Below, one piece after another: positions 26,224 through 56,670 of a stretch of DNA of 64,000 bases. The notes under the pieces were generated by a model, which did no database searches, had not been told where the DNA came from, and saw only the letters and a program-made list of their open reading frames with translations. The position numbers and the translations under genes were made by a program. The stretch spans positions 38,254,001 to 38,318,000 of the forward strand of contig NC_087247.1 in assembly GCF_037042905.1 (NCBI RefSeq), given 5' to 3'. The stretch comes from Lytechinus pictus (taxonomy: Eukaryota). Every line of letters starts with the position of its first letter. The stretch's first letter is position 1.

Positions 26224-27359
26224 AAGTGTTTAGTTTCATTACTGAAAATACAAAGCCCCAGTCGCCCATTTCCCCATGTAGCACCGCCCAGAGCTATAGC
26301 GAGTATAATACAGTATAAGCACGTAAAAGGGTAAGTGGTAGAGGGCTACAGGGCCAGGAGGGGAGAGGGTGTTGCAGGGCCCAGGGGACGGTGGTTTTTT
26401 TTTTTTTTTTACATGGAAATTAATGCTGATATAAATTTGGAAAGAAACGAAAGAAAGAAAAAAAGGTTATCATTGTAAATTGGAGATAAAATTGGTCCCG
26501 AGAAATGGCCATTAAAAAAAGGTTTTCACTAAAAAAATGGAGGTCAAATTAGTTTCATTTGTCAATTTTTACCGTCTTTCAAAATACCTGGGGCCCGGGG
26601 GGCCAGTCAAATGTATTGTTGTACGCACGCGTGGCCAAATTATTTCCAAACACCCCCTAAAAGAGTTTTTCTCTGTGTGCAAAATAGGCGGCTGCCCCCT
26701 AAACAAGTTTTTCGTGGGCTTTATTTAAACATTTTGGCCCCTAAACAAGTTGTCGCCAGATATGACCCCGGGGAAAAAGCTTGGGGAAAAAACATACCCT
26801 TAACACGTTTGGCTAGTTTTAAAAAAACTTTGGAAAAAAAACATACCCTAAATATGTTTGACCCTAGCTGCAATTGACCATTGACCAGTCTTTCAAAACT
26901 ACCCCCTTCATGAAATTTGGTGTGACTGCCCCCCCCCCCGACCTGGGGGTGCTGCCTATATGGAGATTAATACACGCTTTTTTGGGGGGAGGGGTGTAAA
27001 ATTAAAGTAAGTATTCAAATTGACTTTAACCCCCCCCCCCCCCTCTAGCAAGTAAGAGCGACTAAGGACTTGGTTCCCAATCCTACCGTTTACCCGATAA
27101 TAATAAATACTGTAGTAATAAACGAATAAAAGTAAGTAAATCTAATTGAATAAATATCATATGAATGATATTGATAATGATAGCAAGAACCTAAATTATG
27201 AATTATTCAAAGCGATAATTGATATAAAATGTATGTTTCTATTTACAGTATATATTTCATTAGATAATTAAAAAAAAACGTCGCTAAGGAGTATCGATAA
27301 TTTCGCGCGTCCCAAATCTATAGATATCGGTATCGCAAAATTTGTTTACGTTTTCGCCA

Positions 27360-31241: not shown

Positions 31242-34200
31242 ATGGCTGATGTAGAATATGAAGGGGATGCTAGACACTACACACTTTTGACTTTAATCGG
31301 TAAGGAGTAGATATAATGTCTTCTTCTTTTTCTTCCTCAGGGTAGTCTTGTGTCCTTTATACATGAAAATTAATACGAGCGATAATTGAAGTTTTTGTAT
31401 TTCTTATTTCATTTTCTGTACCCTAAAGAAATTGATAAGTTACACGCATGTAGTAAATTGAGAACTACATTGAAGATTGAAAACACCTACATCAATAAAA
31501 ATAAGGCTCCAATGTGCCATAGTGATTATTCACCTAAAATACTGGGACTTCTGAAATAGCAAATACCCCCCCCAAAAAAAAAATGGAGGAAAGGCAACAA
31601 ATATAATAAAAAGGAGGGGCCTTCTTAAGACTAATTGGCTATTTAATATACAGTCTGAAAATATGAAATGAACAAGACTTTCTAATTTATGTAACATTGG
31701 TTAAAATAATGGTGTATGTTATTTGAAATAAGTGTTTGTTTGTTAAAATTGCAGGCCGTAACTTTGAGGGTAATGCTGTGGTCCATATTGCTAGACACTG
31801 TTCTTCTGGTAATCTTGTAGCGGTCAGAAGAGTCAACCTAGACAAAGTCAAAGACAGTTTTGCAGAACTTCGTGTAAGTTTTATTAGAGCTCTGCAATTA
31901 CGGGAAAGAAATTAAATAGTGCAGCAAAATACTTTGTCATCTTGTGGCATGTTGTTTCCCCAGCTCCCCATTATCCAACCATCAAAACCAATTTCTATTT
32001 AGTCTATATAGTCAACTGAAAGTTCTTGGTGAAATCATTGGTTGATGATATAGCCTAGGAGCTCTTCTATCATTTAATATCAATAAACCATTTAATGTTT
32101 ATGTAAACTCCCTAATACAGTCTTGGTGACCATTAATTTAGAATTTTGTCTGCATACGTTTACACCTACATCTTTGCCACTATGGGCAAAATCGTTTAAT
32201 TCCTCTTGTGCCACAGTAATTATAGGGTGCAACCTTAACAGAGTTTTGCATAGACTGTGCTAGCTCAACCCACAATAGCTTTTGATAGGTGAATTGTAAA
32301 GAAAATCTTTTTATATAACAGTGCAATGCACACTTAACTATTGTTTATGTGTGTGTGTATAAAGTACAAAAGACTCGATACACTCTGTGTGTATTGTGAA
32401 TAAAATGTGACTTCAGTTGAAGTTGGTAGTCCATTGTATGTTACTCTAGTCAAACAAAGTGGGCATAGAGTTTAAGTTTTGGAACAACATATTTTGTTTT
32501 TATATCATTCCATGTAGCAAGAATGCCATTTCTCCAAGCTAATGCAACATGAACAAATCCTACCACACTACACATCGTTTGTGAATGGCAATGAATTGTG
32601 GGTTGTGATGCCTCTTATGGAACATGGTAAGAACATCAAACTACTGTATTTACAAGCATTCACCTTTAACATACAGACATGTACTGCGAATTCATTCAGA
32701 GTATTAAAAGCTCAAGATATGATTTTGTAAGCAGCTATTTCAATTAACATTTTTCTTTAAAAATAATGTAATGACTTAAAACCAAAAATGATTCCCCACA
32801 CCAGGACCCCCCACCACCACATTTCGGGTGAAGTTGAAATTCTTATTAGTAATGGGCCCCAACTTAACATAAATCTCAATTCAGATGACTGGTCATTCAT
32901 CTATATATAGAATGATTTAGCTGGTGATTTGATAGGTTTGCCCCTACAAATTCAAAACCCACAACTGTCTTGTGTGAAAACATTCATAATAGAAAATAAC
33001 ATGTATATCATGTAAAGGCATGTATATTTATAATTAATATCATTCATCATTATAATTATTGTTGCATTAGATAGAAGTAATATGATATTTCTTAAATCTT
33101 AACCCACTGAATACAGAATTCTGTAATCCCAACAGCTTTGTACAAGCATTCTGCCAGTTCCAGTGGGCAACAGGTTAATTCTTGACTTTGATTTCTGATT
33201 GATAGGTTCTGCTAGGGATCTACTCGATAGGAATTGTCCTGATGGATTGAAGGAGAGTGTGATAGCACAGATTATGAGAGATGTTGTTCTGGCTCTAGAC
33301 TACATCCATAGAATGGGCTATATCCATAGGTGAGGAGTAGTATTCAGTGTTTTACTATGTATCCACATGATACTAAAAAAATGTACAGTTCGATTGATGA
33401 CATGAATAATGTGATAAATTGTTGATTTTTAACATCAAGTACTAGGTGAAGTATTTAGATAAGCATTATCAGGTGATGCTATTCATTTAAAAAGCCATAA
33501 AAAAGGCACACATTAATGTTACTCACATGCGCTATTGACACATGACCGCAGAAAAAAACAAAGAGGAGTGCATACCAAGGAGAGATTAACATTCTTAGCT
33601 TTGCCTGGCTTTAGCCATGTGATTCCAAATAAGATTTATTTTTGCAAAGAGAATTTTGGTTCCTATTTAAAAAAAAAGTCATTTCTGTTGTTTGGATTGG
33701 TTTCAGTGGATGAGACAAACTATCACTTCCTTGGTGCTATGCATGTTGATTTTGATTCAGTACCATCTTTCCTCTGATTTGATTTAGAAAGAAATTGTCT
33801 CAGAAATGATTGTTTGTCCCTTTACTTTCACCAACGGGACATTTAATTATTTGCTTTATACCTCTATGATTTTTGTCTCGCCTGCATAGCAGAGCGAGAC
33901 TATAGGCGCCGCTTTTCCGACGGCGGCGTCGTCAACATTGAAATCTTAACCAAGGTTAAGTTTTTGAAATGTCATCAGAACTTAAAAAGTATATGGACCT
34001 AGTTCATGAAACCTGGACATAAGTTTAATCAAGTATTACTGAACATCCTGCACGAGTTTCAGGTCACATGACCAAGGTCAAAGGTCACTTAGGGTCAACG
34101 AACTTTGACCATGTTGGGGGAATCAATATTGAAATCTTAACCAAGGTTAAGTTTTTGAAATGTTGTCATAACTTAGAAAGTGTATGGACCTAGTTCATGA

Positions 34201-37200
34201 AACTTAAACATAAGGGTAATAGTGTATCACTAAACATCTTGCGTGAGTTTCAGGGCACATGACCAAGGTCAAAGGTCACTTAGGGTCAACGAACTTTGAC
34301 CATTTTGGGGGTATTTGTGGAATTGTCATCATAACTTAGAAGTATATGGACCTAGTTCATGAAACTTGGACATCAGTTTAATCAAGTATTACTGAACATC
34401 CTGCCTGAGTTTCAGGTCACATGATCAAGGTCAAAGGTCACTTAGCGTCAGCGAACTTTGACCATGTTGGGGGAATCAATATTGAAATCTTAACCAAGGT
34501 TAACCCTAAACAGGCCGGGGGGGTTGAATCAACCCCCCTCAACATTTTCTGCGATCATTCCGCCGCGCGAATTTTTTTTACCGCGCCACTCACAGACTTA
34601 ATATTCTTAAGTCTCGCGCATCTTTTGAGACCAAATTTACGACGCCCGGGTACGCGATTCCGAAATTACGCGACATTTCGTAAGTGCATGTCAGACAAAA
34701 AAATGTTTCAAAACGTGACTTTGTGTACAAAGTCAATGCAAATTGAGTTTTTCTCATTTTATTCATAAAGATATGATTATTTTTACTTTGAACAGCTGAA
34801 ATCAATTGATTTTAGCATAATTATGCTTCAAAAAAGGTTGTGCAATAAATCTGGTGAAAAAAACAAAGAAAAACAAAGAAATACATAAAAAATTCATAAC
34901 ACAATAAAATACATAAGAAATTGATTTCCAAACCGAAGTTTTTTTCAATTGCGATTGTTAAGAATGCTACAAAGAATATTTTTACCAAAAATTAGCATTC
35001 TAGGAGCTTTATTTAGTGAATTAGAGCAAAAAGTATGATTTATGCATAAATTAGCATAATTAATTCATATAAAGTAAAATCTCATTATTTTGGAAAATTT
35101 TACCATACAGCCTTGTAGATTACATCGCACACTACCAGCGTGCAAATTTTTGCGGCTCTCGCACGATCGGCGGCCAAGATCTCAGGGGGGGTTGAATCAA
35201 CCCCCCGGCCACAGAACAGCCAAAAAGCCCGGCCTAATTAGGGTTAAGTTTTTGAAATGTTGTCATAACTTAGAAAGTATATAGACCTAGTTCATGAAAC
35301 TTAGACATAAGGGTAATAGTGTATCACTAAACATCTCGTCTGAGTTTCAGGTCACATGACCAAGGTCAAAGGTCATTTAAGGTCAATGAACTTTGGCCGT
35401 GTTGGGGGTATTTGTTGAATTGGCATCATAACTTTTATGGATCTACACATGTAGTTCATGAAACATAGACATAAGGGTAATCAAGTATGTTTTGCACATG
35501 TCTTAGGTCACCGTCACATGATCATGGTCAAGGTCATGTTGGGTCAATGGACATAGCATTTAATTATCATATGAGAGTTTTCTTTTGTGAATAATTATTC
35601 TATAGCTGTTTTCAAAGTCAGCACTGCTGCAATATTGAATCGCGTAATGCAGGCGAGACTGCCAGAGGCGTTCCACTTGTTACTAGTATCGTTCATAATA
35701 TCCGGTTTGCAGTACAGTCTATTTCAGGGTTTATTAGATATTATGAAATGAATGTTCTTTTGCCCTTTTAATGCATTCTTATAAAGAAATATCTTAGATG
35801 CTGTTGTCTTTCACAAAAAGGACATTGACTAAATTCTTATCCAATGTAAAATGTTATACACTCTGGTCTGAAAAGTGACCAAGATATAATGATGTGAATC
35901 TTCAATTCTGTGAAAGCCTGCACATGATCAACCTTCATAGTGTGCAAAAGACTTGATGAGTTTGATATCAATTGTAAGATCAATTGTAGCCTTTGTGTAA
36001 CATAATAGTGCAGGCCAGGTGCCCCATCCATAACTCAATATATGCAATCAGTCTTACATGTTTTGCAAAGACTTATGATTGATTTTAATCGTAAGATTTA
36101 TGATTGATTTTAATCGTAAGATTGATTGTATTATGTAACATTGCACAGGTTAGGTAACCCCATAGTTTTACCGAATCCATTTTCAGTTTCCACAGGTGAT
36201 TCCTATTCCATGTTACAAAACTTATAACATTAAAGAAAAAAAAAATTGCAATCCCTGTTAATAATTTGTTGTTCATAATCATATAATCTGAATTTCAGGA
36301 GTGTAAAGGCCAGTCACATCCTGCTTACCCAATCCGGTGGTGTTCACCTATCTGGACTGAGAACAGCAGTGAGTATGGTGGAAGATGGCAAGCGACTCAA
36401 GGCAGTTTATGATTTCCCCTCACTGACCACAGTAAGGAACTTGCCCTGGCTAGCAACTGAGGTACTAGAACAGGTATGTTTGTATTTGCATTTTACTGTG
36501 CTAAATCCAGGGTGAAATTTGTATGTTTGTGTGGAATAGGATAACAGAAAAAAATAGATAAATTAATATTATATGAAGTATGAATTTTGTTCTTCAAGCA
36601 TATTCTACATGTCTTCACAATTGTCAGCAAATGATATTTGACAGTTTACTTTACCATGATCTGAGCATGTCTTTTAATTTTCAAATGACAGGAGAGATTT
36701 AATTTGCTTCAGCAGAGAGTATCAACAACTCAATTCTGGCCATGTATGAAGAGGACCAAAGTAAAGAATTTTAGTAATTTTCAAAGTTTTTTTGGATTTT
36801 TGGATTTTTTTGGGCCAACGTTTTGTTTTATGCCTTCAGATTTCTGGTGTTAATTATCATTGTATTGCAAAAAAAAAATGATTATATCTGCTGTTATCTT
36901 TTTATCATAGAATCTTCTTGGATATGATACCAAGTCTGACATTTACAGTGTTGGTATCACTGCATGTGAGCTGTCAAATGGATGTGTTCCTTTTTCAGAT
37001 ATGGTACCCATGAAGGTAAATTTTCTTTTACAGTGGTTCTCATTTCTAACAAAGGAAAGGTATTTTTAAGTGTTTATTTTTATTGTAATTGGTAACCTAC
37101 ATCAGCAACAAAATTGAGGAATTCCTCCAGTTATAAAAAATATCCTAATCCCTTTATAAGCTCACAGAGACATTAAATGGCATGTGATATCCGCTACGAG

Positions 37201-39881
37201 AACTGAATGTTGTCATCATTATATAATGCTTGGTACTTTCCATTTTATATTCTGCATTAAACGTAGCAACAAGACATGAGTAAGATCATGAGAAATTTGA
37301 GACATTTTTGAAAACTAATATCAAGATTCATGTAAAATAAAGATGTATGTTCAATATTACATTTACAATTGATTATACATGTTTCTTCTTAGTACATGGT
37401 TTGATGTGGACTTACAATAGATGTCAAATATAAAATTGATTGTATCTTTTCCTGTTGTAGGGCAAAGCTCTGAATGAAGTTAGACACTTTGGGGGTACTA
37501 TAATTCAAAGCTTCATAATTGATCATAACACATTAACAGTTGATTTGTGTGATAATGGGGCGGTTTTCATAAAGTATCAGGATATGTGGTTACATTGATT
37601 CAAAGTAAGCGCATGCAATTATTTGATTTTCTTTTGTTCTAGATGTTACTGGAAAAGATCAATGGTACAACACCCAAGCTCCTAGACTGTTCTACGCTGT
37701 GTGATGTTGATGGTGTGCCACCCCAAGAACCAGGCTCTAGGGTTGATAGTGGCATCGGTGGAAGCACTGGACTAGCTAATGTACCCAACCCCTATGACAG
37801 GAGATTCTCAACTCATTTTCATGATTTCATGGAAGTATGCCTCCGAAGAGAACCAGTGGATAGGTAGGCAAAGTTATTCTCCCTTACATTCCACATACAT
37901 GCATGAAGAATGGTGTTGTCTTGTTATGAAAAGTCAATCACATGGTAAACTTTAGTTTCTACCTATCAAATGCATCTGTGTTTTTTTTTAAATCTTTCGT
38001 TGATCACTCAAGCCTTGATCTATAGATCTAAAGTCATAATACCTGTTATCAATATCTGAGGCCTGTCTTACAAAGAGTTTGGATTGATCAATTCAATCTC
38101 AACTGTATGGAAACCCATCCAGACCATAACTTTTCTACCGTATATTTGCACAATCTCCTTACTAAACAAAGAGAATGACGTTGAATTTTCCAGAGAATTA
38201 TGAATGTATGCACATACATCATATCTAGAAAATATTTTGAACAAACATACATACAGCATTTTAGATGTTGATGTGGCTGGCCGTCCATAGTTGTGGTTGA
38301 TCAGACCAATCGCAACTCTTCGTAAGATGGGGCCCTGGAGTTAATCGTAAGTATCAGATAATTTTTTATATGGATAATATGAGACTGTTTTGGTTATTTT
38401 TTATCATCACTAATGGGCCTTTTAACACAAAGGTGGATGTAAGTCTGTGGCAATTGGACAAAGAGTTACAAGTAATTGTAAATATGAAGCATATCTCCAC
38501 ATGTTACACCGCTTGGACAAGGATAGATTCAAATTGAAAACATCATTTTCATTCTGTCTGTAGACCCAGTGCCTCTCAACTCCTGCAGCACCCATTCTTC
38601 AAGCAAGTGAGGAAGTCATCTAGTGATGTCTTGGGACCAATGCTACAAGCAGTCCATCCCCTCTCTCAGCTAAGAGAGGGCAAAGTGGATGACCAAAGTG
38701 AGTACATAGGTGTGCATGAAGCTTTTTCTTGGATATTTCTCATGTTGAAACAAACTGCTTTGATGAAGTAGTTTTGTCTCAAATTTTTGACGATTATTTA
38801 ACCTGTTTAGGATCAACTAATGCAGACCTAACTATATGCTGCGATAATGGAAGGTATTCATTTTAAAGATGATGAAGAATTTATTTATCAGTCTGTGAAT
38901 CTGTTATTTGTTCTATTTATATTTTAGATTGATTAGATAACTTTGTAGGGTATGGCTGGCTGAACTTCATAATATAATTTGTGTCATAATTTAAAGAACC
39001 CTGAAAATTCATTATGAAATTGGCAAGTTACTTGAATTGCAGGATGATTTTCCTCTCATAGGTAGCATTTTTATATGAGGGTACCAAAGAATTTTTCATT
39101 ATGGCACTTTGTAATCACAGATGTTATAGGAATTATAATTTCATTCAATTAGAAATCCTTGTATTCATGGTTCTTTATATCCATATGAGTATATTTTATA
39201 TACATAATAATTTAACAAATAATTCATACAAGCTTCGCAAAGACCCAAACTACTTGTTCATGCTTTTCTAGAATGTAGTAATAGTTTAGGAGCTAGGTGG
39301 TAACAAATAAATCATGTTGGTTTTCCATTGACTTCAGACAGAGATGTGCATTGTTGTGATCATTTTCATGTTCTGTATTTATCTCTTTAGAATTATTTAC
39401 ATGTAATGTTATAGTAACGATGTATAGATGTGAGTTTTGATTGTGAGACGATGTTATGCCTCCTTATTTTGGGCATGAACACATAGATGATGATGAATTA
39501 ATCAAACAATGGGCGACTGAAACTATGGAAGACATCATGAAGATGATTTTAACATTTTGTAGAAGATCATAAAGTAAGAATGTGATTATGATTGAATTGA
39601 TGATAATAACAATAATAATAGTGAATATGATGTTGATATGATTATGAATGGTGCTGCGGATGATGGATAAATCTATCATTATTGTCACAGTGATCATAGA
39701 GTGAAAATACATCATTATTTATGAATAATTTATTACTTGAATTATTGTAACCTGTGTTTAAACTACCATGTAATTCTAATTTTTTTATATTTGCACAGAC
39801 AACTCTGAGGTTGGGAACATTGCAGAAGCTGTGCAGAGATTTGAGACTTTAGACATGGTGGACCCTTGGGAATTTGACTGA
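31242..39881 (+). CDS. STRADA: STE20-related kinase adapter protein (STRAD pseudokinase, LKB1/MO25 partner), 375 aa, 9 coding exons
   Basis: Exons 31242-31299, 31755-31873, 32518-32626, 33206-33329, 36299-36473, 36911-37015, 37643-37863, 38564-38697, 39799-39881 (1128 nt). STRAD hallmarks: [16 protein letters not shown] (no catalytic Asp), LSGLR in place of [35 protein letters not shown]-terminal WEF(D). Probably co-orthologous to vertebrate STRADA and STRADB. Confidence 0.96.
33870..35681 (+). mobile_element. HINE-like family A, copy 2 (STRAD intron), interrupted by a piggyBac-like MITE
   Basis: Same termini and tandem units as copy 1 (GTCTCGCCTGCATAGCAGAGCGAGAC ... TGCAGGCGAGAC...TTCCACTTGTT). 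Confidence 0.85.
34504..35243. mobile_element. piggyBac-type MITE nested in HINE copy 2
   Basis: TTAA|CCCTAAACAGGCCGGG ... CCCGGCCTAATTAGGG|TTAA. It splits the host motif AACCAAGGTTAAGTTTTTG at its TTAA. Sub-terminal palindromes GGGGGGTTGAATCAACCCCCC occur at both ends. Confidence 0.88.
39540..39720. repeat. Degenerate (ATG/ATA)n microsatellite
   Basis: Triplet-periodic low-complexity tract in the last STRAD intron. Confidence 0.55.
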
Positions 39882-40675
39882 AGAATTCAACCGTTCCATC
39901 AAGATCTCTGAGAGTTTGAAAATGCCCAGTAACCTATGCAGTCCAAGATAGGTGGTGTTACTTACATAACAGAGGTTCCTCACTCATGTACATAGTGACA
40001 ACTATGTATCTGAACACTGATAGCACATGATGTGATACAAATTTCTTTGCCATTGCATGGGATTTTTAAAGCTCTTGATATAGCATTAAAGTGAGGACTG
40101 TAAAGTTGGCTTGTTCATCAAAGCACGCTTACAGATGTATGTAAGTCAGAGTTTGTGGTAGCCGTGTAGCTGCCTTACATGTAGAACAATATAAAGAGTA
40201 AAAAGTGCAATAGTTAAGAGAGTAGCTACATGAAAATTTAATCTTGAAGCTTCATTTGGCTGTGTGCATCATCTATTTTTTTCCATAAAGGTAATATCAG
40301 ATGACCACTTTACCAAAGAAAACTGTTATTGTTCAGTTATATTTGTTTTATGTCGAACTCGGTATCCACTCAGTCCATAAAAACATGAAGTTAATTGTAC
40401 ATGATGTGATACAATGGATTCATTGTATGGGATGATATGTCATGCATGTATGTATCTCTGTGACTTTAACTTGATGACGGGTCATGTATCTTTTTTTAGA
40501 GAAAGTCTTTGTCAATCAGTGTCAACTGTTACCACATCCTGATCTAGTAAGTCCTGACAAAACAAAAACCAAACATTTCTAAATGATAAATCTAGGCTGA
40601 AACTTAAGTACACTGAAAGTCAGCAACACAGATAGGCAAATGTTGGTACCTGCATTATCATTGCTTGGAAAAAGA

Positions 40676-40776
40676 TTGTCCTCTGGCAGGCGATTGGTTT
40701 GAATCTTATCCCATATGAAGAATGTGTATTTTGCCTTGCAAGGGCTAGTGTGTGTGAACACTGGAGACCAATCTAC
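40676..40776 (-). pseudogene. Inverted decayed fragment of the desaturase first coding exon
   Basis: The reverse complement aligns without gaps to 46868-46968 (79/101 nt by manual count). It translates VDWSPVFTHTSPCKAKYTFFIWDKIQTNRLPED versus [33 protein letters not shown]. Confidence 0.9.
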
Positions 40777-43700
40777 AGGTGGGAAATGCTGTATTCTACC
40801 TAAATCACTTGGGACATATTTCATGTACATCCATTCATAGTGCATACAAACACTTGAGTGATGTTTTGTGCATTTTGTTTAAATTCATTTTTTTTTACTG
40901 TTACTATAACTCAAATTAATGTTTGACCAATGAATGTGATAAGATTATCAGTTTCTATCATATATATCTTATGGTAGGTCAAGCTTTAATGGCAGGCATA
41001 GTTATCTGGCAAAATAAAGAACTATATGTTTTACACATTTGTAAATGTGTGCAATCCTTTATGAAAAGTGTTAATTCTTTGTTTACTTTGGACTTTGGAC
41101 ATTCATGTTTCAAAATGAATATCAGTAATGGAAAAGAAGTTATTTAACTTGTTATTTTGTCAAATGTTCCATTTACATTAATCTTATCCAGGAAAGCTGC
41201 GCAATTATTATTATTATTTTTTTTTGGGGGGGGGGAGTCACTAAGACAGGTCTCTGTAGATGAAATTTGTGTGCTTCAAATTTTACCACTTTTATAAACA
41301 TAATTTGAAAGTTTATACATGACGGGTGAGCTAGCATGCTAGTTAGTATGTATCAGATCTAAAATGTTAGTATTATATTGATATATTGATTTATTTATAG
41401 CTTGGAGAAAACCTGTTTATATCATTAACCTTCATTAGATACGTTATCCAAGAAAGAGGTTTTTTTTAAATTACAATTTTATAATCAAGAATATTTAAAA
41501 TTTGATATATTATGTTAAATGGATGTTTTATTCTATAACATGAAAAAACATTTTATTGCTTGGAGTAATTTTGAGGGATCATCATACCATGTATAGTGAG
41601 ATATGATATAGTTCCTTTTAAAGCATAAATTAACTTTGTCAACAGTAGCGGGGAAAAATTGCTTCTGACGATTGAGAGGTATACTGCATCTCTTCCTAGT
41701 TTATGATCATAAGTTAAGTGCCTTTTACTTTTTAGATGAAATGGAAGTCATTTGACTATCTAAAAGGCAAAGAATATTGCCTAAGATCACCCAGCAGACA
41801 GACCATGTTGGGTGACCCAGTACAGCAGCAGCATGCAATATATGTAGACCATTCTGTATGGTATATGGTGATATCCTTATCATAGAATCATACATATCTT
41901 GATAAATAACTGACTACCTAACTTATAAACTTCTAACCATTTTAGTCTGACCTTAAGGATTGTGAGAACAATTTTGATTATCAGTCGTTGACAAAGTTAT
42001 TGATCATCTTTGATAATGATAATAACTCTTGCTTATATAGTGCTTACTTTCTCGATCTCTAAACGCTCTGCAGTAATGCAGCAGAATTACCCTGGCTTTG
42101 GCAGAGCAGCTGCTACGCGCACTGCGTTTCAAGGAATAATTCTACCATTTCCTATCTTTAAGAAATGTAGTGCATTGTTTCAAAATCTCAAGACTTGGTC
42201 TACTTGCTTGGCTCGTACATATGAGCTGTTACTGAAGTATTTTCAACAGCCACCTGATCAATTCATTTTTATGAAACTAGCCTGCTTTTTAGTCTTGTGT
42301 GCATGTTTCATGATATGCTACCATTAATCTTTGGGGAATAATTTGACTTAAATTATTTGATATTATAATCAGGTTACCCTCAAACAGATATATATTGAAC
42401 AGCTCATTTAATCCCTCGTTGAGAAAGCTTGACTTACCCATCAGCACTAATAAGAAATGAAATACTGCTGGTACATATGGCAGAACAGTGTTCAATTATC
42501 TCAAAACATTTGTGGAGTACATGTATTGTAAATATTAAATCCTGTGAGTACAAATGATTTTGCTATGTGTACAATGCAAGGAAAAGATGTTTGATATATT
42601 TGGCGAGTTGATAAATAGACTTTGCTATGCTTAAACTGTAATGCCTTTATGTCTATTGTGTCTTTGTTTTTATTACATTAATATCAAACTGCTATATTGA
42701 CTTAAGGGCCCTGTCACATACTGCCATCTAATGATGCTTCAGTCTAACTTTTTTTTCACCAGATGGTGTTTGATGCCTGCAAATTTAGTTTTGTATGTAA
42801 TCAATAGTAAATAGGAAGTCATTGTTACGTTGATGTATAGATATGTCTGTAAACAAGCAAGAGAAGTTAAAGAGTCAAATAAATGTAGCCATTTCTTACT
42901 GGTACTCAGATTGTATGATTAGACAGCAATAAGTGACAGGGCCATTTACAAGTAAGAACCTTAAATGATAATGTCGGCAGCAATGAAGTGATAAAGCTAT
43001 GTCTTGAATTGCGAGTATTATTTCTGGGCATGTTGCATTAAGAGTTGCGTTTAAATGCAAAAAAAAAAATGAAGCGCAAGCCCCTGATATGCATATATTA
43101 TTGGGTGAAAGTTGCATTTGATTTTTTAAATTGTGTTTTATCACAACTCTTTCTGCAACGGGTCCCTGGCCAGGTTAGATATGAGGGAGTTTTGAAAAAA
43201 CAAGGATCCTTTGTAATTATTTTATGAACAAATAGTACATTTCATTTTGTACAGGCATTAGTATTACCCACTCTTGGTACCGCCAAAGCAGTCCAACAAA
43301 GTCTATTATTATCTTGTGTTAGAACAGTTCCAAAGATACCCTGCTTGATTAATCCCTACTTGTTCCCTCCCTGTTGGAAGACAGTTATCACTTGTTTATA
43401 TATTGAGGATAATCAATGCTAAATTTGATTCTGAGGTATTGTGTATTTTGGTTTTGAAACACACTATTTCACATTTTTCCTTCATTCCCATTGATAGCAA
43501 ATTTTCTTTCTTATATCATCTATTTCATATCTTTCTCTTTCATTCTCTGTCCTTTTTCCAATTTCTCACCTTTCTCTATAGTGTCTCGATCCTAAAGCTC
43601 TCAATCTCTTCCTCGTTTATTTACTACTACATCAATCTATCTATTTATTACATCCATTCTCACGATCCCCTTGTTCTATTAACCCCCTTCCCATATTTCA

Positions 43701-45991
43701 TCTCTGTTCATGAAAAAAGGGTATACTAAGGCATCATTAAAGTTTGATCCGACTGGGTTGTCTATTGTGTTACTTAAATATTTTACTTTTCATTTTCTTA
43801 CCATTAGACTGCGAAAAGAAATCACACCTTATACTAAAAACTTGACATTTAAGAAACCTTAAATTGTATGTCCTGAAACTTGCTCACACTTATAATTGAA
43901 TAGTCAATTTTTGTCGCAAAAGGTATCCATACTTGAGAATGTAAATGACAATATGCAATTTCATAAAACTTTGTTTACAACTTAAAAAAACAAACTTGTG
44001 CATATATCATAATGAGAAGACATCCCTCCAATTTCATAATCTTATTAAAATTTTCAGATTAGTTAATTTATGTTATATTTTTTGTTGTTGAAACCGTTTT
44101 GCGATGATATTTTTTTATACACTTATTAATAGAGGCTTCCACTTTTCGTGCACAGCCAAGCATTTTGTTATCCAGCTGTTGACAAAGGCATGACTTGGGA
44201 GCGAGACCCAATGTTAAGTTAACTTGTATTCTTTGACACCTTTGTCTGGGGATTTACTGATGTACACGGGGGTATTATACCTGTCGCACGTCCCCCTTGC
44301 TCATTGTATCGAATACAAACTGTCTTGTATTGTTTTTCTTTCGATGTCCACAATCAAAGAGCCGATTATTGAGCATAATTGGCCTGAACGACACTGCATT
44401 GTCCAGTTTTAAAGATGGATGAAGGGGATGAAACATAACTGGTAGAAGCGTGTACACCAATATGTCAAGGGTTGCAGCATCCATTACCCTTGCTGGTTGA
44501 TCTTGAGGCCTTAACATCCGTGGCAAGAATGAAGATACTAGATATTCGAGGGTGATCAGTTGAAAACTCTTAATATAAAGTGGAGCGCCGCTGGCGCCGT
44601 TGTAGCACTGATCTCTTCATCTGTAGACTAGTCCCAGACTATACAGATCAGTGGTATTTCGGGACTTGTTCTGAGATAATTAATGGACAGTGAGCAGGAT
44701 TGCTGGTAATTTTAAGTGTCTGGAGAGCATGAGAATGAACTGTTCAAACTCCGACAGAGATTGCAAACCGAGGGACTTGATCACCTTTGATACCCTTTTC
44801 AGGAACAGCTACCGCCGAATCGCGATCCTACAGCTAATGCTAGCCTATTTCTCATCGTCAGCGCAGTATCTGGAGCCGCTACTTTCTTGGACTTTGGTAT
44901 GTTCCCCATTATCATTTGGTTTGATTTCTAGTATTTTGTATAATATTTTTAATAAATACGGTAACATACTATGAAATCATGGTCACAGCCAGGCAATCAC
45001 ATGGACTTCGGGTTATTCTGATTTCATTATACCCCATGAAATTCAGAACGTGCGCGTTACTGAGATGTAACTTTCGAGTTCATTGCTGGATGGTAGCCTT
45101 AGCCAAGGTGGATGTTTGAAAATACCTCTTTGGAGTCTGCGGTGTTTTTTTTTGCTCTCCATCTCCCATTATTACCATGTTTGCTGCGTTAGCGCCCTCT
45201 TACCTCATCCTGAACGCGCAATTCGAAAGGAATAGTGGTCCGATCATGTTTTCATGTGCTGATGATAGATCGCTGAAAGGGGTTCAAAGTTCACATGACG
45301 TCGATGTTCCAATTTCTCATTCCCATCCCCATTGTCAAGTTCAACTCGCTCCAATGTGCCGTGCAGGTGTTCCAGTGAACGCTACAGCACAATGGTTGCT
45401 ATGCATCAAAACGACATTTGTTAGGCCAACATCACGTACTGTACCACTCAATACATGGAGCGGGAAATGAACTTGTGATTATAAAACCCATTAACAAAGT
45501 AATTGATCAATGTTGATAACGAATATTATACGCTGCAATTTTGAAAAGTATCATTCCTTATTCAAATATATCTAAATAAAAATCCATATTGACACAGTAC
45601 TCGAAACCACACTTTACAAAGGTTGTGGTCATTACGATGGTTGTCGATCAAAAGAGCCTGTTATGAATGTGTTCAATCATTAACGCCGAAAAAAGGAGGA
45701 AGTAGAGCCTGCATGTAAATATATTTCTTGAATTGCAGAGGTAAGTATGGGTATATTATGTTTTGTGATGGATGGAATACGACATTTGCAGTGCTTTTCC
45801 GTTTCAATGAAGCCGTTTCATTTACGGTTTTCCATGGATATAATCGTCACCTTGTGCCAAATGAAAATATTACACCTCTCTATCTACTATGTTTCCGGAG
45901 TCTAGATTCGAATAATTCCATACTGATCTGCTACAAGACCGCATAGTCGAAAAGTGAGCCGTAGTATATGTCCCTCTTGTACAATGTATAA

Positions 45992-46407
45992 AGGCCACCG
46001 CACACCTTACGACTGTTCGCGATCCGATTGTGGAACAAATCGCATTTTGCTAATTTTCTGAAGATGTGAATGGAACATATCATTTTATTTGAGGTTAAAA
46101 TTAATTGAAAGAATAATCTTATAACCATTTTGGAAGATTGCAAGCCTTTATTTGGAGTAAAGGCCAACTTAGTTTCTAATCGTAGCCAATCGTACGACTG
46201 CTATGACGTCATTACGACTAGATATTAAATTATCTTTTATTCTAAGAAGGATGATAGCATAGTCACATATTTGATCATAGGTATTCGTATACGATGATTT
46301 ATAACATTACACAGTAAGATATTCCAAGTCTCAATATTAGCATCAAATTCTACAACATTTTATTCTGAAATCGGGTCGCAGACCAGTCGTAAGGTGTGCG
46401 GTCGCCT
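45992..46407. mobile_element. PIF/Harbinger (Tourist-like) MITE
   Basis: TAA|AGGCCACCGCACACCTTACGACTG ... CAGTCGTAAGGTGTGCGGTCGCCT|TAA: 24-bp TIR with 1 mismatch and a 3-bp TAA TSD. Confidence 0.85.
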
Positions 46408-46828
46408 TAAGGCTAAAGCAACATAATGATATGCGTTCACTACCCAGGGGTATCATACCCATTTCTTGATAGCTTTCTCGATAGTACCATGATATAACGT
46501 AAATTGCCTCTTGAACGACAGTTCTTACTTCGATCTCTTTATTTCAAAGCGAGTATCATAAAACACACATGAACGTCATCTGGATGCTATCTTTTTCGTG
46601 ACGATCTATAAATAAGCAGAGAAATTGTTAAAATGTGCTTGTTTGAGAACCCAAAGCACAATCATGGTGTAATTGAAGTAAAAGTAATCGGCCTGTGTGA
46701 GTCCGTCGTATGCTAATTTGGATTTATTCACCAATAAATTATTGTTATACAGGCTTTAAAATATATATCCAACCATTCTCATGACCAGTACTCGCTTCAG
46801 GAGCAACGTAAGTTTTCTATTATACATC

Positions 46829-49800
46829 ATGCGTACATCAATGGTTCTGCGGTCAAAGACTGCATCGGTAGACCCATCTGATTCGTTCACACACACTGGC
46901 CCTTGCGATGCAACACCCAAATTCTTCACATGGGATGAGATTCGAACCCATGCCCTGCCAGAGGACAAGTGGTTGGTGATAGAAGGTGACGTTTATGATA
47001 TCACCGAATGGTCGAAAAGACATCCAGGCGGAAAGGCGATCATCAGTCACTACGCTGGACAAGATGCATCGGTAGGTTATATAAAGTTATAAGTTTTATC
47101 GGAAAATATCATATGTCACTGAGAAATGGTTATCATAAAGAGATATTAAAAAGTTTTTTTTGAACATCTTACACAGTCTAAATTGATCCTCGTTTGCAAT
47201 TACATATACATGTATTATATCGTGCTCTGTATAGCTATATCGCAGCTATCTACAATATCCAACATTCCAATGAGAACTACGTGAATGTGTCTATTTTTTC
47301 TTACGCGAATAACTAGTTTGAATATATGATTTATATTTTTCTTGCAGGATGCCTTTATCGCCTTCCATCGAGACCTGCAATTCGTTAGCAAGTATATGAA
47401 CATGTATCGAATAGGAAAGGTCAAGGATTATAGCGAGCACATATCTGATCTTTCTCGAGATTTCAGAGACCTTAGAAACCGGACCAAGAAAATGGTAATA
47501 TTTTATTAGCTCTATAATTGTATTTGAAAATGAATTTTGAATCATACACTGCATTTTGTCTGTTAACCTTGTTTGCTTAATGGCAATATAATTTGCTGTC
47601 TCGTTTGTCTGATGGCAAGAATAACCTATAAATGGTTCCGTCTGTAATTAATTGTCGACTGATTGTTGAACGCTTTACATTGTATAGCGTAATTCTGCAC
47701 TGTTTATCATTTTCAAAATATTGTTCAAGTCTCAAAATCACAAATTGTTTTATAGGTATAACTTTTCAATCTTTCGAAATTCACCATGAACTGTACCGAA
47801 ATACCATGAATTAATTTTTGTTCGTCTCTTTTATTCACGGGTCATAGGCCTCCTTAGTATATTTCTTTTCAAGGAATTAGTGACATTAATATTACGTTTA
47901 TACTATACATAGGGGGCCTATTTTGTTTACAAAATAAACAAAATTTAGCCCTTGCTTTCGTTCCTCTTATCAAGATACTGAGGGTTACGTAATGAGTCAA
48001 ATACTTCGAAAGGATGGCGTATGGTGCAAAATTTGTGGTAAATTAGACCATTTTGAATTGAAATTTATTTTGTATAGATTCTGACATAACTTTCAGAAAA
48101 TTAGATTTCGCCCTTTCTTTTTTTCTTATTTCCCTCATTAAAAAGAAAATCTTTCTTGATCGTGGAGTTTGGGGAGGGGGTAGGGGCAAATGTCCCAAGT
48201 CTTTCTAATCTACACCGGTAAATATTGCTACTTTGGTTGCACCCCTGATGTTACAGCGAAGTCATAATCGGTATCTTTAATCGCTTTACCACCAGGGACT
48301 TTACAAGCCAAACTATTGGTTCTATGTCTTCCAACTCTCACACATCATCGCCCTTGAGATCACAGCCTATCTCATCGTCTCATTCCTTGGTGGAACCGTT
48401 CTTTCCTGGATACTTGCAGCCTTGCTTATCGGGACCGGTCAAGTTCAAGGATCGTGGCTCAACCACGACTTCGGTCACCTGTCCGTCTTCAAGTCCACCA
48501 AAGCCAATCTCTTGGCTCAGAAGTTCGTGTTTTCTGGAATTCAGGTAGGGCATATTATTCATTGATCGAATGGAATTGGAGCGAAAGTTTTCGTCTTGGG
48601 AGTCTTTATAATTAAATTCAGCCTGCATAATGACCAACTCGATACTTTCAAGTCGCAGTCTGCAATCTCGAGTATGTATACCTATGCAATTAGGATAAGT
48701 GGACGATCCCGTCTTTGGGGTTCTACATATATATTACAATACATACTTCGGAATTGTAAAGTTGTTTATCATGGACACCTGTTACATGGTAAAATAATGT
48801 GATCTTATTTATATTTGTCAGCAGTTTGAATAACAACAGTATAATTTCGATATGAAATCTTCCCAATTTTCCATCACACTTTCTCTCTAAATTACCCCCT
48901 GCTCGTTTTCTTCTCTTTCATACTCTTTTCTTTATCTTTACATCACAAAGGGTGTCTCGGCATCATGGTGGAAGTATCGTCATTATTTGCACCATTCGAA
49001 ACCAAACGTGGTAAGAGCTGACCCCCTTTCTAAAAAAATCACAACGGGCATTGTCGGCACCATTAGTTTCATCAAATTTTGTGTAATAATATTCAGCCGA
49101 TGAAACGCTTTACACGTCAAATTTTTGTCTCACCTGCATAGCAGAGGGGGACTATATAGCCGCCGCTTTTCTGACGGCGGCGGCGGCGTTAACACCAAAT
49201 CTTAACCGAAGGTTAAGTTTTTGAAATGACAGCATAACGTAGAAAGTATATAGACCTAGTTCATGAAACTTGGACATAAGAATAATCAAGTATTACTAAA
49301 CATCCTGGCTTAGTTTCAGGACACATGACCAAGGTTAAAGGTCATTTAATGTCAATGAACTTAGACCATGTTGGGGGAATCAACAACAAAATCTTAACCC
49401 AAGGTTAAGTCTTTGAAATGTCATCATAACTTAGAAAATATGGACCTAGTTCATGAAACTTAGACATAAAGTTAATCAAGTATTACTGAACATCCTGCCT
49501 GAGTTTCAGGACACATGACCAAGGTCAAAGGTCATTTAGGGTCAATGAACTTTGGCCAAGTTGGGGGTATCTGTTGAATTACCATCATAACTTCAAAAGT
49601 TTATTAATGTGATTCATGAAACTTAAACATAAGAGTAATCAAGTATCACTGAAAATCCTGTGCGCATTTCAGGTCACATGACCAAGGTCAAAGGTCATTT
49701 AAGGTCAATGAACTTTGGCCATGTTGGGGGTATTTGTTGAATTACCATCAAAACTCTGTAAATGTATGGATTTAGTTCATAAAACTTGGAAATAAGAGTA

Positions 49801-52800
49801 ATCAAGTATCACTGAACATCTCATGCGAGTTTCAGGTCACATGACCAAATTCAAAGGTCATTTAAGGCCATTGAACTTTGGCCATTTTGGAGGTAATTAT
49901 TAGATTGCTGTCATAACTTTCAAAGTTTATAGATATACATGTAGTTTTTAAATGTGGATATATAGGGGTAATCAAGGATCACTGACAAGACTTAGGTCTC
50001 ATGATCAAGGTCAAATGTCATTTATTGTCAATGAACGTAGTATTGTATACTTATATGAATGGTGTTTTTTGTGATTTATTTATTAGTAGTTTTCAAAGTC
50101 AGCACTGCTACCATATTGAATCGCGTGATGCAGGTGAGACTGCCACCCTGCCAGAGGCGCTCCACTTGTTTTAATATTAATCATTAAATTCAAAATTTCT
50201 TATTTTTGGCTCGTTCACAATTTTCCGGAACAGACGTACTCCATAGGCCAATCCTTGGTATATACCCATGCACAATTCAGTCCCCTCGAATCGTTTGCCT
50301 TTGATTACGTCGTTGTCCATAACGACGGTCCTTCTATTGCAAACACTCTTTGTTAAGTATGTTTGATGAAATATTCTTTTACTGTGTTGTCTATGTTTTT
50401 AAATAAAATGCCATAATTATTATCAAATGGACTTATTGTACCACATTTGTTACATTCAATTTTTATATACATTTATGAGAACAGCAGAATAAAATATTTG
50501 AAATGTACTTTCCTTCATTTTCAATCTAAACTTTTTACAAGTTGTTTGATAAAAACCATTGTTCATTTTAGATTGATAAGGACCCCGACATCAAAATGGA
50601 GATCTTTCTATTGGTTGGCGACACCATACCGATCGAGGTGGCTAAGTCAAAGAAAGGTTTCATGCCTTATCAACATCAACATCGGTACTTCACTGTTTGT
50701 AAGTCAAGCATTCTTCATAACAATTTCATGAAATTCAAATGACATTGCAACTTTCGAAGACTTGACTCACTTGAATCACTGTGTCCTTAAACAAGCTAAA
50801 CATGCCAAAAGAAAGTACGTTAGATTAATAGCGTAAACTATCATTCACAGATTATTCTTTTATTTTGATTTATCAGTACAAAACTTAAATCATTGTATAT
50901 ATTGAAGTGAATTATCTACGTGTATCTTTTACTTTATGGCTGTTATCTTATAAGATACAATAATGCAAATATGTATTCTCTTACATTGTTCCCCTTCTCT
51001 TCATCTCACAGTGTCGCCACTTTTGCTAGTTGTATATTATTACTACGAGGTTTTACGGTTCGTCTTCAAAAGAAAAGAATGGCTGGTAAGATTTTAAATA
51101 CTGTCAGGCCTTCTTACACAATAACAAAGTGATATAAATCTGATAATCAAATGATCAGATCACATCATTCCCCATTGGAGAGTTTGGGACTTAATGCTAT
51201 TTTAGGGTAGTAAATCTCTGTTTGCTGCATCTTTCATTTGATAATGCTTTACGTTATTTAGTATTCAACATTTTAACACACTCATAATTATCTGTTTTAT
51301 TTTGTATGGTGCAATGATAAGAAATAACAAAACAAAAAACAAAACTCTTAAGGATTTTTTTTCAAACATACAATGTTTATGAGAATATGATTGTGTTAAA
51401 CCAAATCATATTTGCTGAAGATCAACCAATGTGTTGGTATTTGATTATTACCTAATCAGCAGTCGCCTAAAATGTGACGTATTTTATCATTGAAATGATA
51501 TAATGTATATTATACTCTTCGATTAATGCCTCCCTTTTCGATACATTTACTTTCATATTTTTCTATCCATGCATTGTATTCCTCATTTTTCTTTGTTATT
51601 TGAAATTGCAAAGGGACAATCCGGCTGCCCCCTGTCACTCCTAAATACAATTAATAATATATCAATATTAATATTGTACTTTCTTTCTCTGCAGGAACTT
51701 TTCTTGATGGTGTTATACTTCATTCGCTGTTTGTATCTCTTCACACCTATTACTGGAATTGTCGGAGTATATACCATCTTATATCTTAGCAGGTATATTA
51801 TTCACGTTGTCTGAAATTATTACAAAATATTTTATAATTATGGTGGCTATAGATATTAGCCTATTAATGTTAGTTGTAGGCTACGAAGATCATGTTTTAA
51901 CAAATTGGCTCCAACTGACATGCCATGATGCTTCCCGACAATAATGATAATAATTAAATTCATTCTTTTGTTATATCTCTACTGAACATTTCTGAATGTC
52001 GATATCATGGCTTTGTTTCTTTTCTGCAGGGTGATTCAGAGTATGTGGTTCATATGGGTTAGTCAATCAAACCACATCCCAATGGCAGTAGAACACGATG
52101 AACATGATAAACATTGGGTCCCTTTACAGGTAATTGTCAATGAACATTAATGTTATTGAATGATACAGAAAACACGGTCTTTGGATATGTTATAGAGAGG
52201 GAGAGCAAGGGATAAACAGAAGGAGTGAGACAGACAAAGAAAGAGAGAGAGAGAGGGGGGGGGGGAGAGAGAAGCACGACGACGGCGTAGATTAACATGT
52301 TAACGAAGATGATGGTGATGATGATGATAACGATGATGATGATGATGATGATGATAATGATTATTTTATAAAAGAGCGAAGACGCCAATATAAGAAAGAA
52401 GCCAATTAAAGTGGAAGAGAACTACAGCATGAGTAATAAACTAAAACTCAGCATGTTCGGGGTTGGGAACTTTCAAGTTATCTTCGTGCGGAGATGGCGC
52501 TCTTTAAATTTGAGTTTGTTTGCCGGAGATTTTACAGCGGAAATTTTTGTTACTGGTTTTCTAAAGGGTAGCAATACTAACCCCCCTCCCTATTGAGCCC
52601 ATTTCAATTATTTTTCTCTCATGTAGATTATGTCCAGATACGATTGATACTTCATCAATTGACACAAAATGATTGCCAGATTTTATAACTTTACGATGTA
52701 TATCATCACCCACAGATGCATGCTACTTGCAACCTCGATTCTTCCCCTTTTATTGATTGGTTCACGGGCCATCTTAACTTCCAAATTGAACACCAGTAAG

Positions 52801-56169: not shown

Positions 56170-56670
56170 TGAGGCCTTCATCTTATACGACTGGTCCACG
56201 ATCCAATTTTGGAACAAATCATATTTTGTTTTTTATATTTTCTAAAATGTAAATGAAACGTAGTTTTATTTGTAGTTGAAACAAACTGGATAAAAATACT
56301 TATATAGCAAACTAATATATTTGGACATATAGTAGGCCCCCTCCCCTATTCATATGGCGTAGGCTCGGGGGTGCACGTGCACCCTCCCGCTGAGGCAGAA
56401 GAGTTCCGACACTGGCAAGCAAAAACAATGTATACCCCTTCTGCTTTCAACAGCTGATTTTCCAAAATTTAGTTCCACCTCCCCAAGATGTGAACCCCCA
56501 CTGATCTGAATATTATATCAGTGACACCCCCTACCACTTTAGTTCCACGGCTCCCCATACTCAAACCAATACGCCCTCAGTGATAAAACGATGATTCCGA
56601 ACTGCACAATAAGATATTCAACGTCTTAATATTCGCATCAACTTTTGCTAAGTTTTATTTTAAAAATGGT
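56170..56670. mobile_element. Degenerate copy of the Harbinger-like MITE with an internal insertion
   Basis: TACGACTGGTCCACGATCCAATTTTGGAACAAATC and TAAGATATTCAACGTCTTAATATTCGCATCAA resemble the 5' and 3' internal parts of 45992-46407. Confidence 0.55.

What the first reader, a model, noticed from the sequence alone, without database searches (positions are those of the whole stretch)
40676..46968. Probable STRAD 3' UTR carries an antisense copy of the neighbouring desaturase's first coding exon
Seen: 40676-40776 is the gap-free reverse complement of desaturase coding sequence 46868-46968 (79/101 identity, about 71/84 in the core, by manual count). It lies about 800 nt after the STRAD stop and before the first AATAAA I found (41013-41018), though an ATTAAA at about 40085 could end the transcript earlier. 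Of 13 core mismatches only one is at a third codon position, so it is not maintained as protein. Four are changes that would leave G-U pairs in an RNA duplex. Inference: STRAD mRNA could base-pair with the 5' coding region of the desaturase mRNA, or a read-through transcript could fold into a ~100-bp hairpin (endo-siRNA or ADAR substrate). That would couple an LKB1-AMPK pathway component to PUFA synthesis. The neutral alternative is a relic of an inverted duplication.
Basis: partly seen in the sequence, partly recalled or inferred. Interest (0 to 1): 0.8.

Follow-up and report, generated by a model that had tools for sequence, protein, structure and literature searches.

The report
Decaying desaturase exon fragment in STRAD 3' UTR
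A 100-base upside-down copy of part of a fatty-acid desaturase gene's first exon sits in the transcribed tail of the neighbouring STRAD gene in Lytechinus sea urchins, but it is decaying at the neutral rate, so it is most likely a harmless relic, not a regulator.

Summary
40676-40776 is the gap-free reverse complement of desaturase exon-1 coding sequence 46868-46968 (79/101; core 71/84). These are the only two copies in the 811-Mb genome (E 6.5e-18).

Stranded RNA-seq shows that the copy is transcribed on the STRAD strand, inside a 3' UTR that runs from the stop (39879-39881) to just past AATAAA (41013). No opposite-strand reads were seen, and no continuous read-through toward the desaturase.

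The STRAD exons identify the window as a Lytechinus, apparently L. pictus. The copy sits at the orthologous UTR site in L. variegatus. It is absent downstream of STRAD in S. purpuratus, Diadema setosum and one other echinoid.

Between the two Lytechinus species the copy diverges at 9.1% plus a 2-nt deletion. Intergenic DNA diverges at 7.9% (p=0.58). Every change since the species split weakens pairing and none is compensatory. Complementarity within a species is no better than across species. The deletion breaks the antisense open frame, so the copy is not coding.

Best reading: a young, lineage-specific, small inverted duplication carried as a passenger in the UTR. A strong RNA duplex with desaturase mRNA is possible (-131 kcal/mol), but nothing indicates selection for it.

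The parts
40676..40776 (-). Inverted partial copy of desaturase exon 1 (core 40676-40759). It is desaturase-sense on the minus strand, so it reads as antisense within the plus-strand STRAD mRNA.
   Evidence: 84 nt at 85%; 79/101; only 2 copies in the genome. One search shows plus-strand RNA depth of 13-22 over this bin.
46868..46968 (+). Parent arm. It codes residues 10-43 of the front-end fatty acyl desaturase: the N-terminal leader plus the first ~14 residues of the cytochrome b5 domain.
46841..47071 (+). Desaturase exon 1 (ATG at 46841; GT donor after 47071).
   Evidence: translation; Cyt-b5, E 1.2e-17; the L. variegatus orthologue is a 488-aa Cyt-b5 + FA_desaturase product.
39799..39881 (+). 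Last STRAD coding exon, ending ..DPWEFD, with the stop at 39879-39881.
   Evidence: joint 38697^39799, GT..AG, 13+5 reads; 100% identical to P0149.
39882..41035 (+). STRAD 3' UTR. The end is approximate, about 20 nt after AATAAA at 41013-41018.
   Evidence: same-direction reads and overlapping contigs run from the coding exon to about 41000-41091. Depth is 0-0.7 in 41001-41200.
41013..41018 (+). AATAAA polyadenylation signal that fits the drop in coverage.

Best explanation
This is a young, lineage-specific relic of a small local inverted duplication.

About 100 bp from the middle of desaturase exon 1 was copied in reverse orientation into the STRAD 3' UTR, 6.1 kb upstream of the parent. I infer that this happened by a template switch or a templated insertion during break repair or replication. 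It happened in the Lytechinus lineage after it split from Strongylocentrotus, and before the window species and L. variegatus split.

Since then the copy has drifted neutrally. It is transcribed only as a passenger in STRAD mRNA. It could in principle pair with desaturase mRNA, but it is not under detectable selection to do so.

Shown here: the repeat itself, its uniqueness in the genome, its transcription and strand, its presence or absence across species, and its neutral rate. Inferred: the mutational mechanism and the lack of function.
For: - The genome holds only two copies, so this is not a transposable element.
- Homology has sharp edges. It runs 15/15 identical up to 40676 and then stops, and no other desaturase exon has a relic anywhere in the window.
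- The fragment lies inside a single exon. It has no exon junction and no poly(A), so it is not a retrocopy.
- It is present at the orthologous UTR position in L. variegatus. It is absent from STRAD downstream sequence in S. purpuratus, Diadema setosum and an echinoid transcript with 1.2 kb of UTR.
- In the five-way alignment, 8 copy-versus-desaturase differences pre-date the species split. After the split the window copy gained 4 changes and the L. variegatus copy 6, counting the two columns of its 2-nt deletion. Every one lowers pairing and none is matched by a change in that species' desaturase.
- Complementarity is 71/84 and 66/84 within species, against 69/84 and 67/84 across species.
- Divergence between the species is 9/99 = 9.1% in the copy and 7.9% in intergenic DNA (binomial p = 0.58). 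It is 5.9% in the parent arm and 4.3% in exon 1.
- The minus-strand open frame is broken in L. variegatus, and no minus-strand reads were seen.
- No A>G differences are listed inside the copy at depth 13-22.
Against: - The copy is stably transcribed in the UTR and could form a very stable imperfect duplex with desaturase mRNA. The energy is -130.6 kcal/mol, against -39 +/- 5 for shuffles, with uninterrupted helices of 24, 19 and 15 bp. L. variegatus still reaches -108 kcal/mol. A by-product effect on the desaturase therefore cannot be excluded.
- Only two closely related species carry the copy, so the power to detect weak constraint is low.
- Mismatches at third codon positions are fewer than expected: 1 of 13 (p = 0.04), or 2 of 16 polarised copy-lineage substitutions (p = 0.06). 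I treat this as chance.
- Small RNAs, hyper-edited reads and desaturase co-expression could not be examined.
Confidence: 0.8

Rival explanations
1. Functional trans-acting natural antisense segment. STRAD mRNA pairs through the 84-101-nt segment with the 5' coding region of desaturase mRNA, 27-127 nt after the ATG. This lowers desaturase translation or stability, or feeds Dicer or ADAR, and so links LKB1-AMPK signalling to PUFA synthesis.
For: The segment is transcribed in the right strand and context. The predicted duplex is very stable, with helices up to 24 bp. The pair meets the computational definition of a trans sense/antisense pair, BLASTN E <= 1e-9 (PMC2528163; here E 3.75e-20). The validated Lymnaea antiNOS/nNOS pairs are only about 80% identical. 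The segment is retained in two species.
Against: The segment evolves at the neutral rate, has a 2-nt deletion and shows no compensatory change. Pairing within a species is no better than across species. It is absent in other urchins. No A>G signal is listed in the copy. The STRAD-desaturase adjacency is itself recent and has been rearranged.
Confidence: 0.1
2. A read-through STRAD-desaturase transcript folds into an intramolecular hairpin of about 100 bp with a 6.1-kb loop. This would be a substrate for endo-siRNA production or ADAR editing.
For: Both arms are on the same DNA molecule in inverted orientation, and both genes are on the plus strand. Some plus-strand RNA exists beyond the poly(A) site, at 41265-42546.
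Against: Both stranded runs show zero depth at 42601-43000 and 43401-44400. Coverage drops at the AATAAA site.
Confidence: 0.03
3. The fragment is what remains of a whole inverted paralogue of the desaturase, or is a live minus-strand exon. The window has a 100-codon open frame at 40579-40878 in the desaturase frame, with an ATG and an AG|GTACC donor-like site.
For: A 100-codon open frame in 36% GC DNA, in the parental reading frame.
Against: No minus-strand reads were seen. The frame is broken by a 2-nt deletion and stops in L. variegatus. There is no Pfam match and no homologue in 5.8 billion proteins. All 12 changed codons in the core are nonsynonymous. No other desaturase exon relic exists in the window. 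The flanks lose similarity abruptly even though the core is 85% identical.
Confidence: 0.04

Closest known systems
Lymnaea stagnalis antiNOS-1/antiNOS-2 RNAs, antisense transcripts from NOS pseudogenes (PMC3537157; identity figure quoted in PMC2528163)
   Same: An inverted partial copy of a coding region is transcribed from a separate locus. It is about 80-85% complementary to the parental mRNA over roughly 100 nt or more, so it is capable of trans duplex formation.
   Different: In Lymnaea the antisense lies in a pseudogene transcript, and duplex formation and regulation were shown by experiment. Here it is a passenger in the 3' UTR of an unrelated, intact protein-coding gene. It has no functional evidence and evolves neutrally.
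Computationally defined trans sense/antisense transcript pairs, and natural antisense transcripts derived from pseudogenes (PMC2528163; PMC2984423)
   Same: It meets the BLASTN-based definition, with the reverse complement of one transcript matching another at E <= 1e-9. It arose by duplication of a gene fragment.
   Different: Those catalogues are lists of candidates, most without shown function. This pair involves a 3' UTR, not a non-coding RNA or an annotated pseudogene, and the two partners are neighbours 6 kb apart.
Endo-siRNA-generating inverted duplications and pseudogene/gene duplexes in mouse oocytes (Tam et al. 2008 and Watanabe et al. 2008; recalled from my own knowledge and referred to in the discussion of PMC2528163)
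   Same: Inverted gene-derived sequence that could give dsRNA with the parental mRNA.
   Different: Small-RNA data could not be examined here. The duplex is short and imperfect, with a longest uninterrupted helix of 24 bp.
Templated insertions and template-switch duplications at repaired breaks: SD-MMEJ (PMC2943611) and FoSTeS/MMBIR-type events (PMC5120786)
   Same: A short stretch of about 100 bp copied from nearby sequence, in inverted orientation, with sharp edges and no mobile-element hallmarks.
   Different: This mechanism is inferred only. The pre-insertion sequence and junction microhomologies could not be reconstructed, because the S. purpuratus UTR is not alignable here.

Membership tests
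trans natural sense/antisense transcript pair (definition used in PMC2528163) | The reverse complement of one transcript matches the other at BLASTN E <= 1e-9, outside known repeats | tested here: met
   E 3.75e-20 in the window. Only two copies in the genome.
trans natural sense/antisense transcript pair (definition used in PMC2528163) | Both partners are transcribed, in the required orientations | tested here: inconclusive
   The UTR arm is transcribed on the plus strand. The desaturase exon was outside the single stretch that could be laid, so its expression in the same samples was not seen.
functional antisense regulator (Lymnaea antiNOS type) | RNA-RNA duplex in vivo and an effect on the target | not testable with these tools
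   Only the in-silico duplex energy is available (-130.6 kcal/mol).
selected regulatory element | Evolves more slowly than neutral DNA, or keeps pairing through compensatory change | tested here: not met
   9.1% against 7.9% intergenic divergence (p = 0.58), plus a 2-nt deletion. There are no compensatory changes. Pairing is 71/84 and 66/84 within species against 69/84 and 67/84 across species.
processed pseudogene / retrocopy | Spans exon-exon junctions, with a poly(A) tract and target-site duplications | tested here: not met
   The homology lies wholly inside exon 1 (46868-46968) and ends abruptly on both sides. There is no A-tract.
transposable element or dispersed repeat | Many copies in the genome | tested here: not met
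   Two places only in 811 Mb.
coding exon of a desaturase paralogue | Open frame conserved in relatives, Cyt-b5 signature, transcription on its own strand | tested here: not met
   The frame is broken in L. variegatus. There is no Pfam hit and there are no minus-strand reads.
inverted duplication left at an inversion breakpoint (staggered-break model) | The copy lies at the junction of the inverted segment | tested here: not met
   The STRAD segment is inverted between S. purpuratus and Lytechinus. However, sequence collinear with S. purpuratus STRAD downstream reaches window 42631, so the breakpoint lies at least 1.8 kb beyond the copy.

The most novel reading that the evidence does not exclude
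In Lytechinus, a recently acquired antisense fragment in the STRAD 3' UTR acts as a trans (or locally acting) antisense RNA on the neighbouring front-end desaturase mRNA. That would be a newborn regulatory link between an LKB1-AMPK pathway gene and PUFA synthesis, too young for constraint to show up in a two-species comparison.
Probability: 0.08. Interest if true: 0.6.

Novelty: new member of a known kind. Interest (0 to 1): 0.27.

Why it matters
If the neutral reading holds, this is a clean, dated example of how a short inverted gene fragment enters a neighbouring gene's 3' UTR. It instantly creates a transcribed antisense segment, the raw material from which trans-antisense regulation could evolve, but it has no regulatory importance of its own.

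It is also a caution. Strong complementarity plus transcription is not evidence of function. A two-species rate comparison was enough to show drift.

If the segment did act on the desaturase, it would be a rare case of an mRNA 3' UTR serving as an antisense regulator of its neighbour. That could be tested in L. pictus.

Tried and rejected
- **Minus-strand exon or micro-ORF.** Rejected.
- **Decayed head-to-head paralogue.** Peptides from all desaturase open stretches were run with tblastn against 26000-46700 and against the whole window. Only the exon-1 fragment hit. The other hits were the 163-bp satellite.
- **Origin at the STRAD inversion breakpoint.** Rejected, because collinearity with S. 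purpuratus extends to 42631.
- **Polarising the inversion with outgroups.** Diadema, Apostichopus and Acanthaster have neither the desaturase nor the left neighbour within the 10 kb fetched on either side of STRAD, so they are uninformative.
- **Gene conversion between the arms.** There is no within-species excess of identity.
- **Codon-position bias as a sign of selection.** p = 0.04 for 1 of 13, weakening to 0.06 with polarised changes. GC content is equal at all three codon positions. I treat the bias as chance.
- **Rfam.** No hits at E <= 0.1 in 39800-47100.
- **Local RNA structure at 40476-40780.** Not unusual, z = +1.5.
- **scan_promoters_terminators.** A bacterial-type scan, irrelevant here.
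- **One protein search spent poorly.** The search with lamprey STRAD returned only vertebrates. Close relatives were reached only after a profile mixing amphioxus STRAD with window exons.
- **Run-index result for organism B.** It holds 21-26% of the words of 40600-40850. The conserved flanks may account for this, rather than the copy.
Full report
**1. The observation**

- The repeat finder gives arms 40676-40759 and 46885-46968, 84 nt and 85% complementary.
- A gap-free count over 40676-40776 against 46868-46968 gives 79/101.
- Similarity stops abruptly on both sides. It runs 15/15 identical up to 40676 and then drops to random.
- BLAST E is 3.75e-20 within the window and 6.5e-18 against the whole 811-Mb assembly.
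- The assembly holds only these two copies. Two more distant desaturase paralogues, on other contigs, match only at the protein level.

The parent arm lies inside desaturase exon 1 (ATG at 46841, exon to 47071). This exon encodes the start of a cytochrome b5 domain (Pfam PF00173, E 1.2e-17).

- The 13 core mismatches fall at codon positions 6/6/1. All 12 changed codons are nonsynonymous.
- Four mismatches become G-U pairs in the STRAD-UTR/desaturase-mRNA orientation.
- ATTAAA is at 40085 and AATAAA at 41013.

**2. The genes**

Homologues map STRAD exons on the plus strand from 31242 to 39881. The protein ends ..DPWEFD with a stop at 39879-39881.

Exon cores are 100% identical to a protein that NCBI names STRAD-alpha-like of Lytechinus pictus. 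The window is therefore from that species or something extremely close.

The downstream gene is a front-end fatty acyl desaturase. The L. variegatus orthologue is a 488-aa Cyt-b5 + FA_desaturase product. Sea urchins are known to carry three such Fads genes (PMC5215697), which agrees with the three exon-1 matches in this genome.

**3. Transcription**

Two stranded, rRNA-depleted RNA-seq runs of the same species were laid on 38401-44400.
- The last STRAD intron (38697^39799, GT..AG) is supported by 13 and 5 reads, all with the first mate on the minus strand. This fixes the library orientation.
- Every read from 39801 to about 41000 has that same orientation. Depth over 40601-40800 is 12.8 and 22.
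- Depth falls to 0 and 0.7 in 41001-41200, just after AATAAA.
- Overlapping transcriptome contigs chain the coding exon to 40840 and 41091.
- A dip at 40201-40400 coincides with polymorphic indels and loose ends at about 40217. It also coincides with a gappy stretch in the interspecies alignment.

So STRAD mRNA does carry the copy, antisense to the desaturase.
- No reads of the opposite direction were seen at the copy.
- No A>G differences at 10% or more are listed inside it. Hyper-edited reads would have been filtered out.
- Depth is zero at 42601-43000 and 43401-44400, which argues against a continuous read-through transcript able to fold the two arms together.

**4. Pairing potential**

The two 101-nt RNAs are predicted to form a duplex of -130.6 kcal/mol. 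Shuffled controls give -39 +/- 5. The longest uninterrupted helices are 24, 19 and 15 bp. Pairing is therefore physically plausible. On its own this shows only that the sequences are complementary.

**5. Relatives**

A STRAD exon search gave representatives. A profile mixing amphioxus STRAD with window exons then reached urchin orthologues. Their genomic loci were fetched.

In L. variegatus, STRAD is followed by the desaturase as in the window. The copy sits at the orthologous UTR position.

No copy was found in:
- the 10 kb downstream of STRAD in S. purpuratus;
- the 10 kb downstream of STRAD in Diadema setosum;
- the 1.2-kb 3' UTR of an echinoid transcript contig.

A five-way alignment of both copies, both Lytechinus parents and the S. 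purpuratus parent polarises the changes in the 84-nt core.
- Eight copy-versus-desaturase differences pre-date the species split. S. purpuratus sides with the desaturase state at five and with the copy at one.
- Four arose in the window's copy.
- Six arose in the L. variegatus copy, counting the two columns of its 2-nt deletion.
- Six arose in the desaturase exons, four of them at third codon positions, as expected for a constrained coding sequence.

Every post-split change in a copy destroys a pair. No desaturase change is matched by a change in the same species' copy. Complementarity is 71/84 and 66/84 within species, against 69/84 and 67/84 across species.

Substitution divergence between the two species:

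| Region | Divergence |
|---|---|
| Copy, 40676-40776 | 9/99 = 9.1% (plus the 2-nt deletion) |
| Intergenic, 41036-45990 | 7.9% (binomial p = 0.58 against the copy) |
| Rest of the UTR | 6.2-7.4% |
| Parent arm | 5.9% |
| Desaturase exon 1 | 4.3% |

The deletion and new stops break the minus-strand open frame in L. variegatus. That frame also has no Pfam match and no homologue in the protein database.

The copy is nested with the Lytechinus desaturase: 82-85% identity to the window's own desaturase arm, against 67-69% to the S. purpuratus arm. It carries about as many pre-split as post-split changes. The duplication is therefore roughly twice as old as the split of the two Lytechinus species, and younger than the Lytechinus/Strongylocentrotus split.

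**6. Origin**

Several sources can be set aside.
- No other desaturase exon has left a trace in the window.
- The fragment lies within one exon and has no poly(A).
- It is not a repeat family.

A small, local, inverted templated duplication is the simplest source. Examples are a template switch or synthesis-dependent end joining (PMC2943611; PMC5120786). This step is inferred, not shown.

The STRAD segment is inverted relative to both neighbours between S. purpuratus and Lytechinus. In S. purpuratus the order is desaturase(-), STRAD(+), left-neighbour blocks. In Lytechinus it is left-neighbour blocks, STRAD(+), desaturase(+).

A block at 42527-42631 is still collinear with S. purpuratus STRAD downstream sequence. 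The breakpoint therefore lies between 42631 and 46825, not at the copy. A staggered-break model would also put a desaturase-derived duplicate on the 5' side of STRAD. I therefore do not link the copy directly to the inversion. The inversion may, however, have brought the UTR close to exon 1.

Diadema, a sea cucumber and a sea star have no desaturase within the 10 kb fetched on either side of STRAD. The neighbourhood is recent.

**7. Verdict**

The observation and its UTR placement are confirmed. The regulatory interpretation is not supported.

The closest known functional analogue is the Lymnaea antiNOS pseudogene antisense RNA (PMC3537157). This pair meets the sequence definition of a trans sense/antisense pair (PMC2528163), but it fails the constraint test.

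The third-position deficit among mismatches is p = 0.04, falling to 0.06 after polarising the changes. I regard it as chance.

I put 0.8 on the neutral relic, about 0.1 on a real antisense effect, and small remainders on the hairpin and exon or paralogue readings. Small-RNA and editing data, duplex capture and a 101-bp deletion in L. pictus would settle it.

Noticed in passing
window 20825-46841, compared with L011 and L012 (S. purpuratus): The STRAD gene segment is inverted relative to both flanks between S. purpuratus and Lytechinus. In S. purpuratus the desaturase is head-to-head with STRAD, and the window's left-neighbour blocks lie downstream of STRAD. In Lytechinus the left-neighbour blocks come first, then STRAD, then the desaturase tail-to-head. 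The right breakpoint lies between 42631 and 46825. Of the two S. purpuratus scaffolds, only L012 carries the desaturase within 10 kb.
   Followed up: partly
window 40476-40675: The 200 nt of STRAD 3' UTR just upstream of the copy differ at only 4/199 sites from L. variegatus, against 7.9% for intergenic DNA (p about 4e-4 before correcting for about 35 windows). The block is more conserved than desaturase exon 1. It has no Rfam hit and no unusual fold, and it is not alignable to S. purpuratus.
   Followed up: partly
window 45991-46408: A segment of about 420 bp bounded by 28-40-nt terminal inverted repeats (93% complementary) is absent from the orthologous L. variegatus site. It has a related copy at 56186-56665. 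It looks like a species-specific MITE-type insertion just upstream of the desaturase.
   Followed up: partly
window 41265-42631: Plus-strand RNA at low depth, and a 1.3-kb transcriptome contig, lie beyond the AATAAA site. They end near a block (42527-42631) that is conserved with S. purpuratus STRAD downstream sequence. This may be a long 3' UTR isoform of STRAD or a separate non-coding RNA.
   Followed up: no
window 49260-49938; also 34000-35600 and about 26000-26250: A 163-bp tandem satellite sits in a desaturase intron. Related arrays sit in a STRAD intron and upstream of STRAD.
   Followed up: no
window about 40215-40217 and 43127-43168: RNA reads and contigs run off into unlike sequence here: 11 reads at 40217 in one run, and 4 to 8 reads at each of 43127 and 43168 in both stranded runs. 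This suggests insertion polymorphisms or repeat boundaries in the sequenced individuals.
   Followed up: no
window 38697-38709: The annotated STRAD isoforms of 379 and 375 aa differ by SEYI. This fits two alternative donors 12 nt apart at the end of the penultimate exon. The laid reads use the 38697 donor.
   Followed up: partly
window 58126-60470 (+): Open stretches downstream of the desaturase (..[22 protein letters not shown]..) look, from memory only, like a guanidinoacetate N-methyltransferase-type gene. Pfam gave no hit on the single-exon pieces.
   Followed up: no
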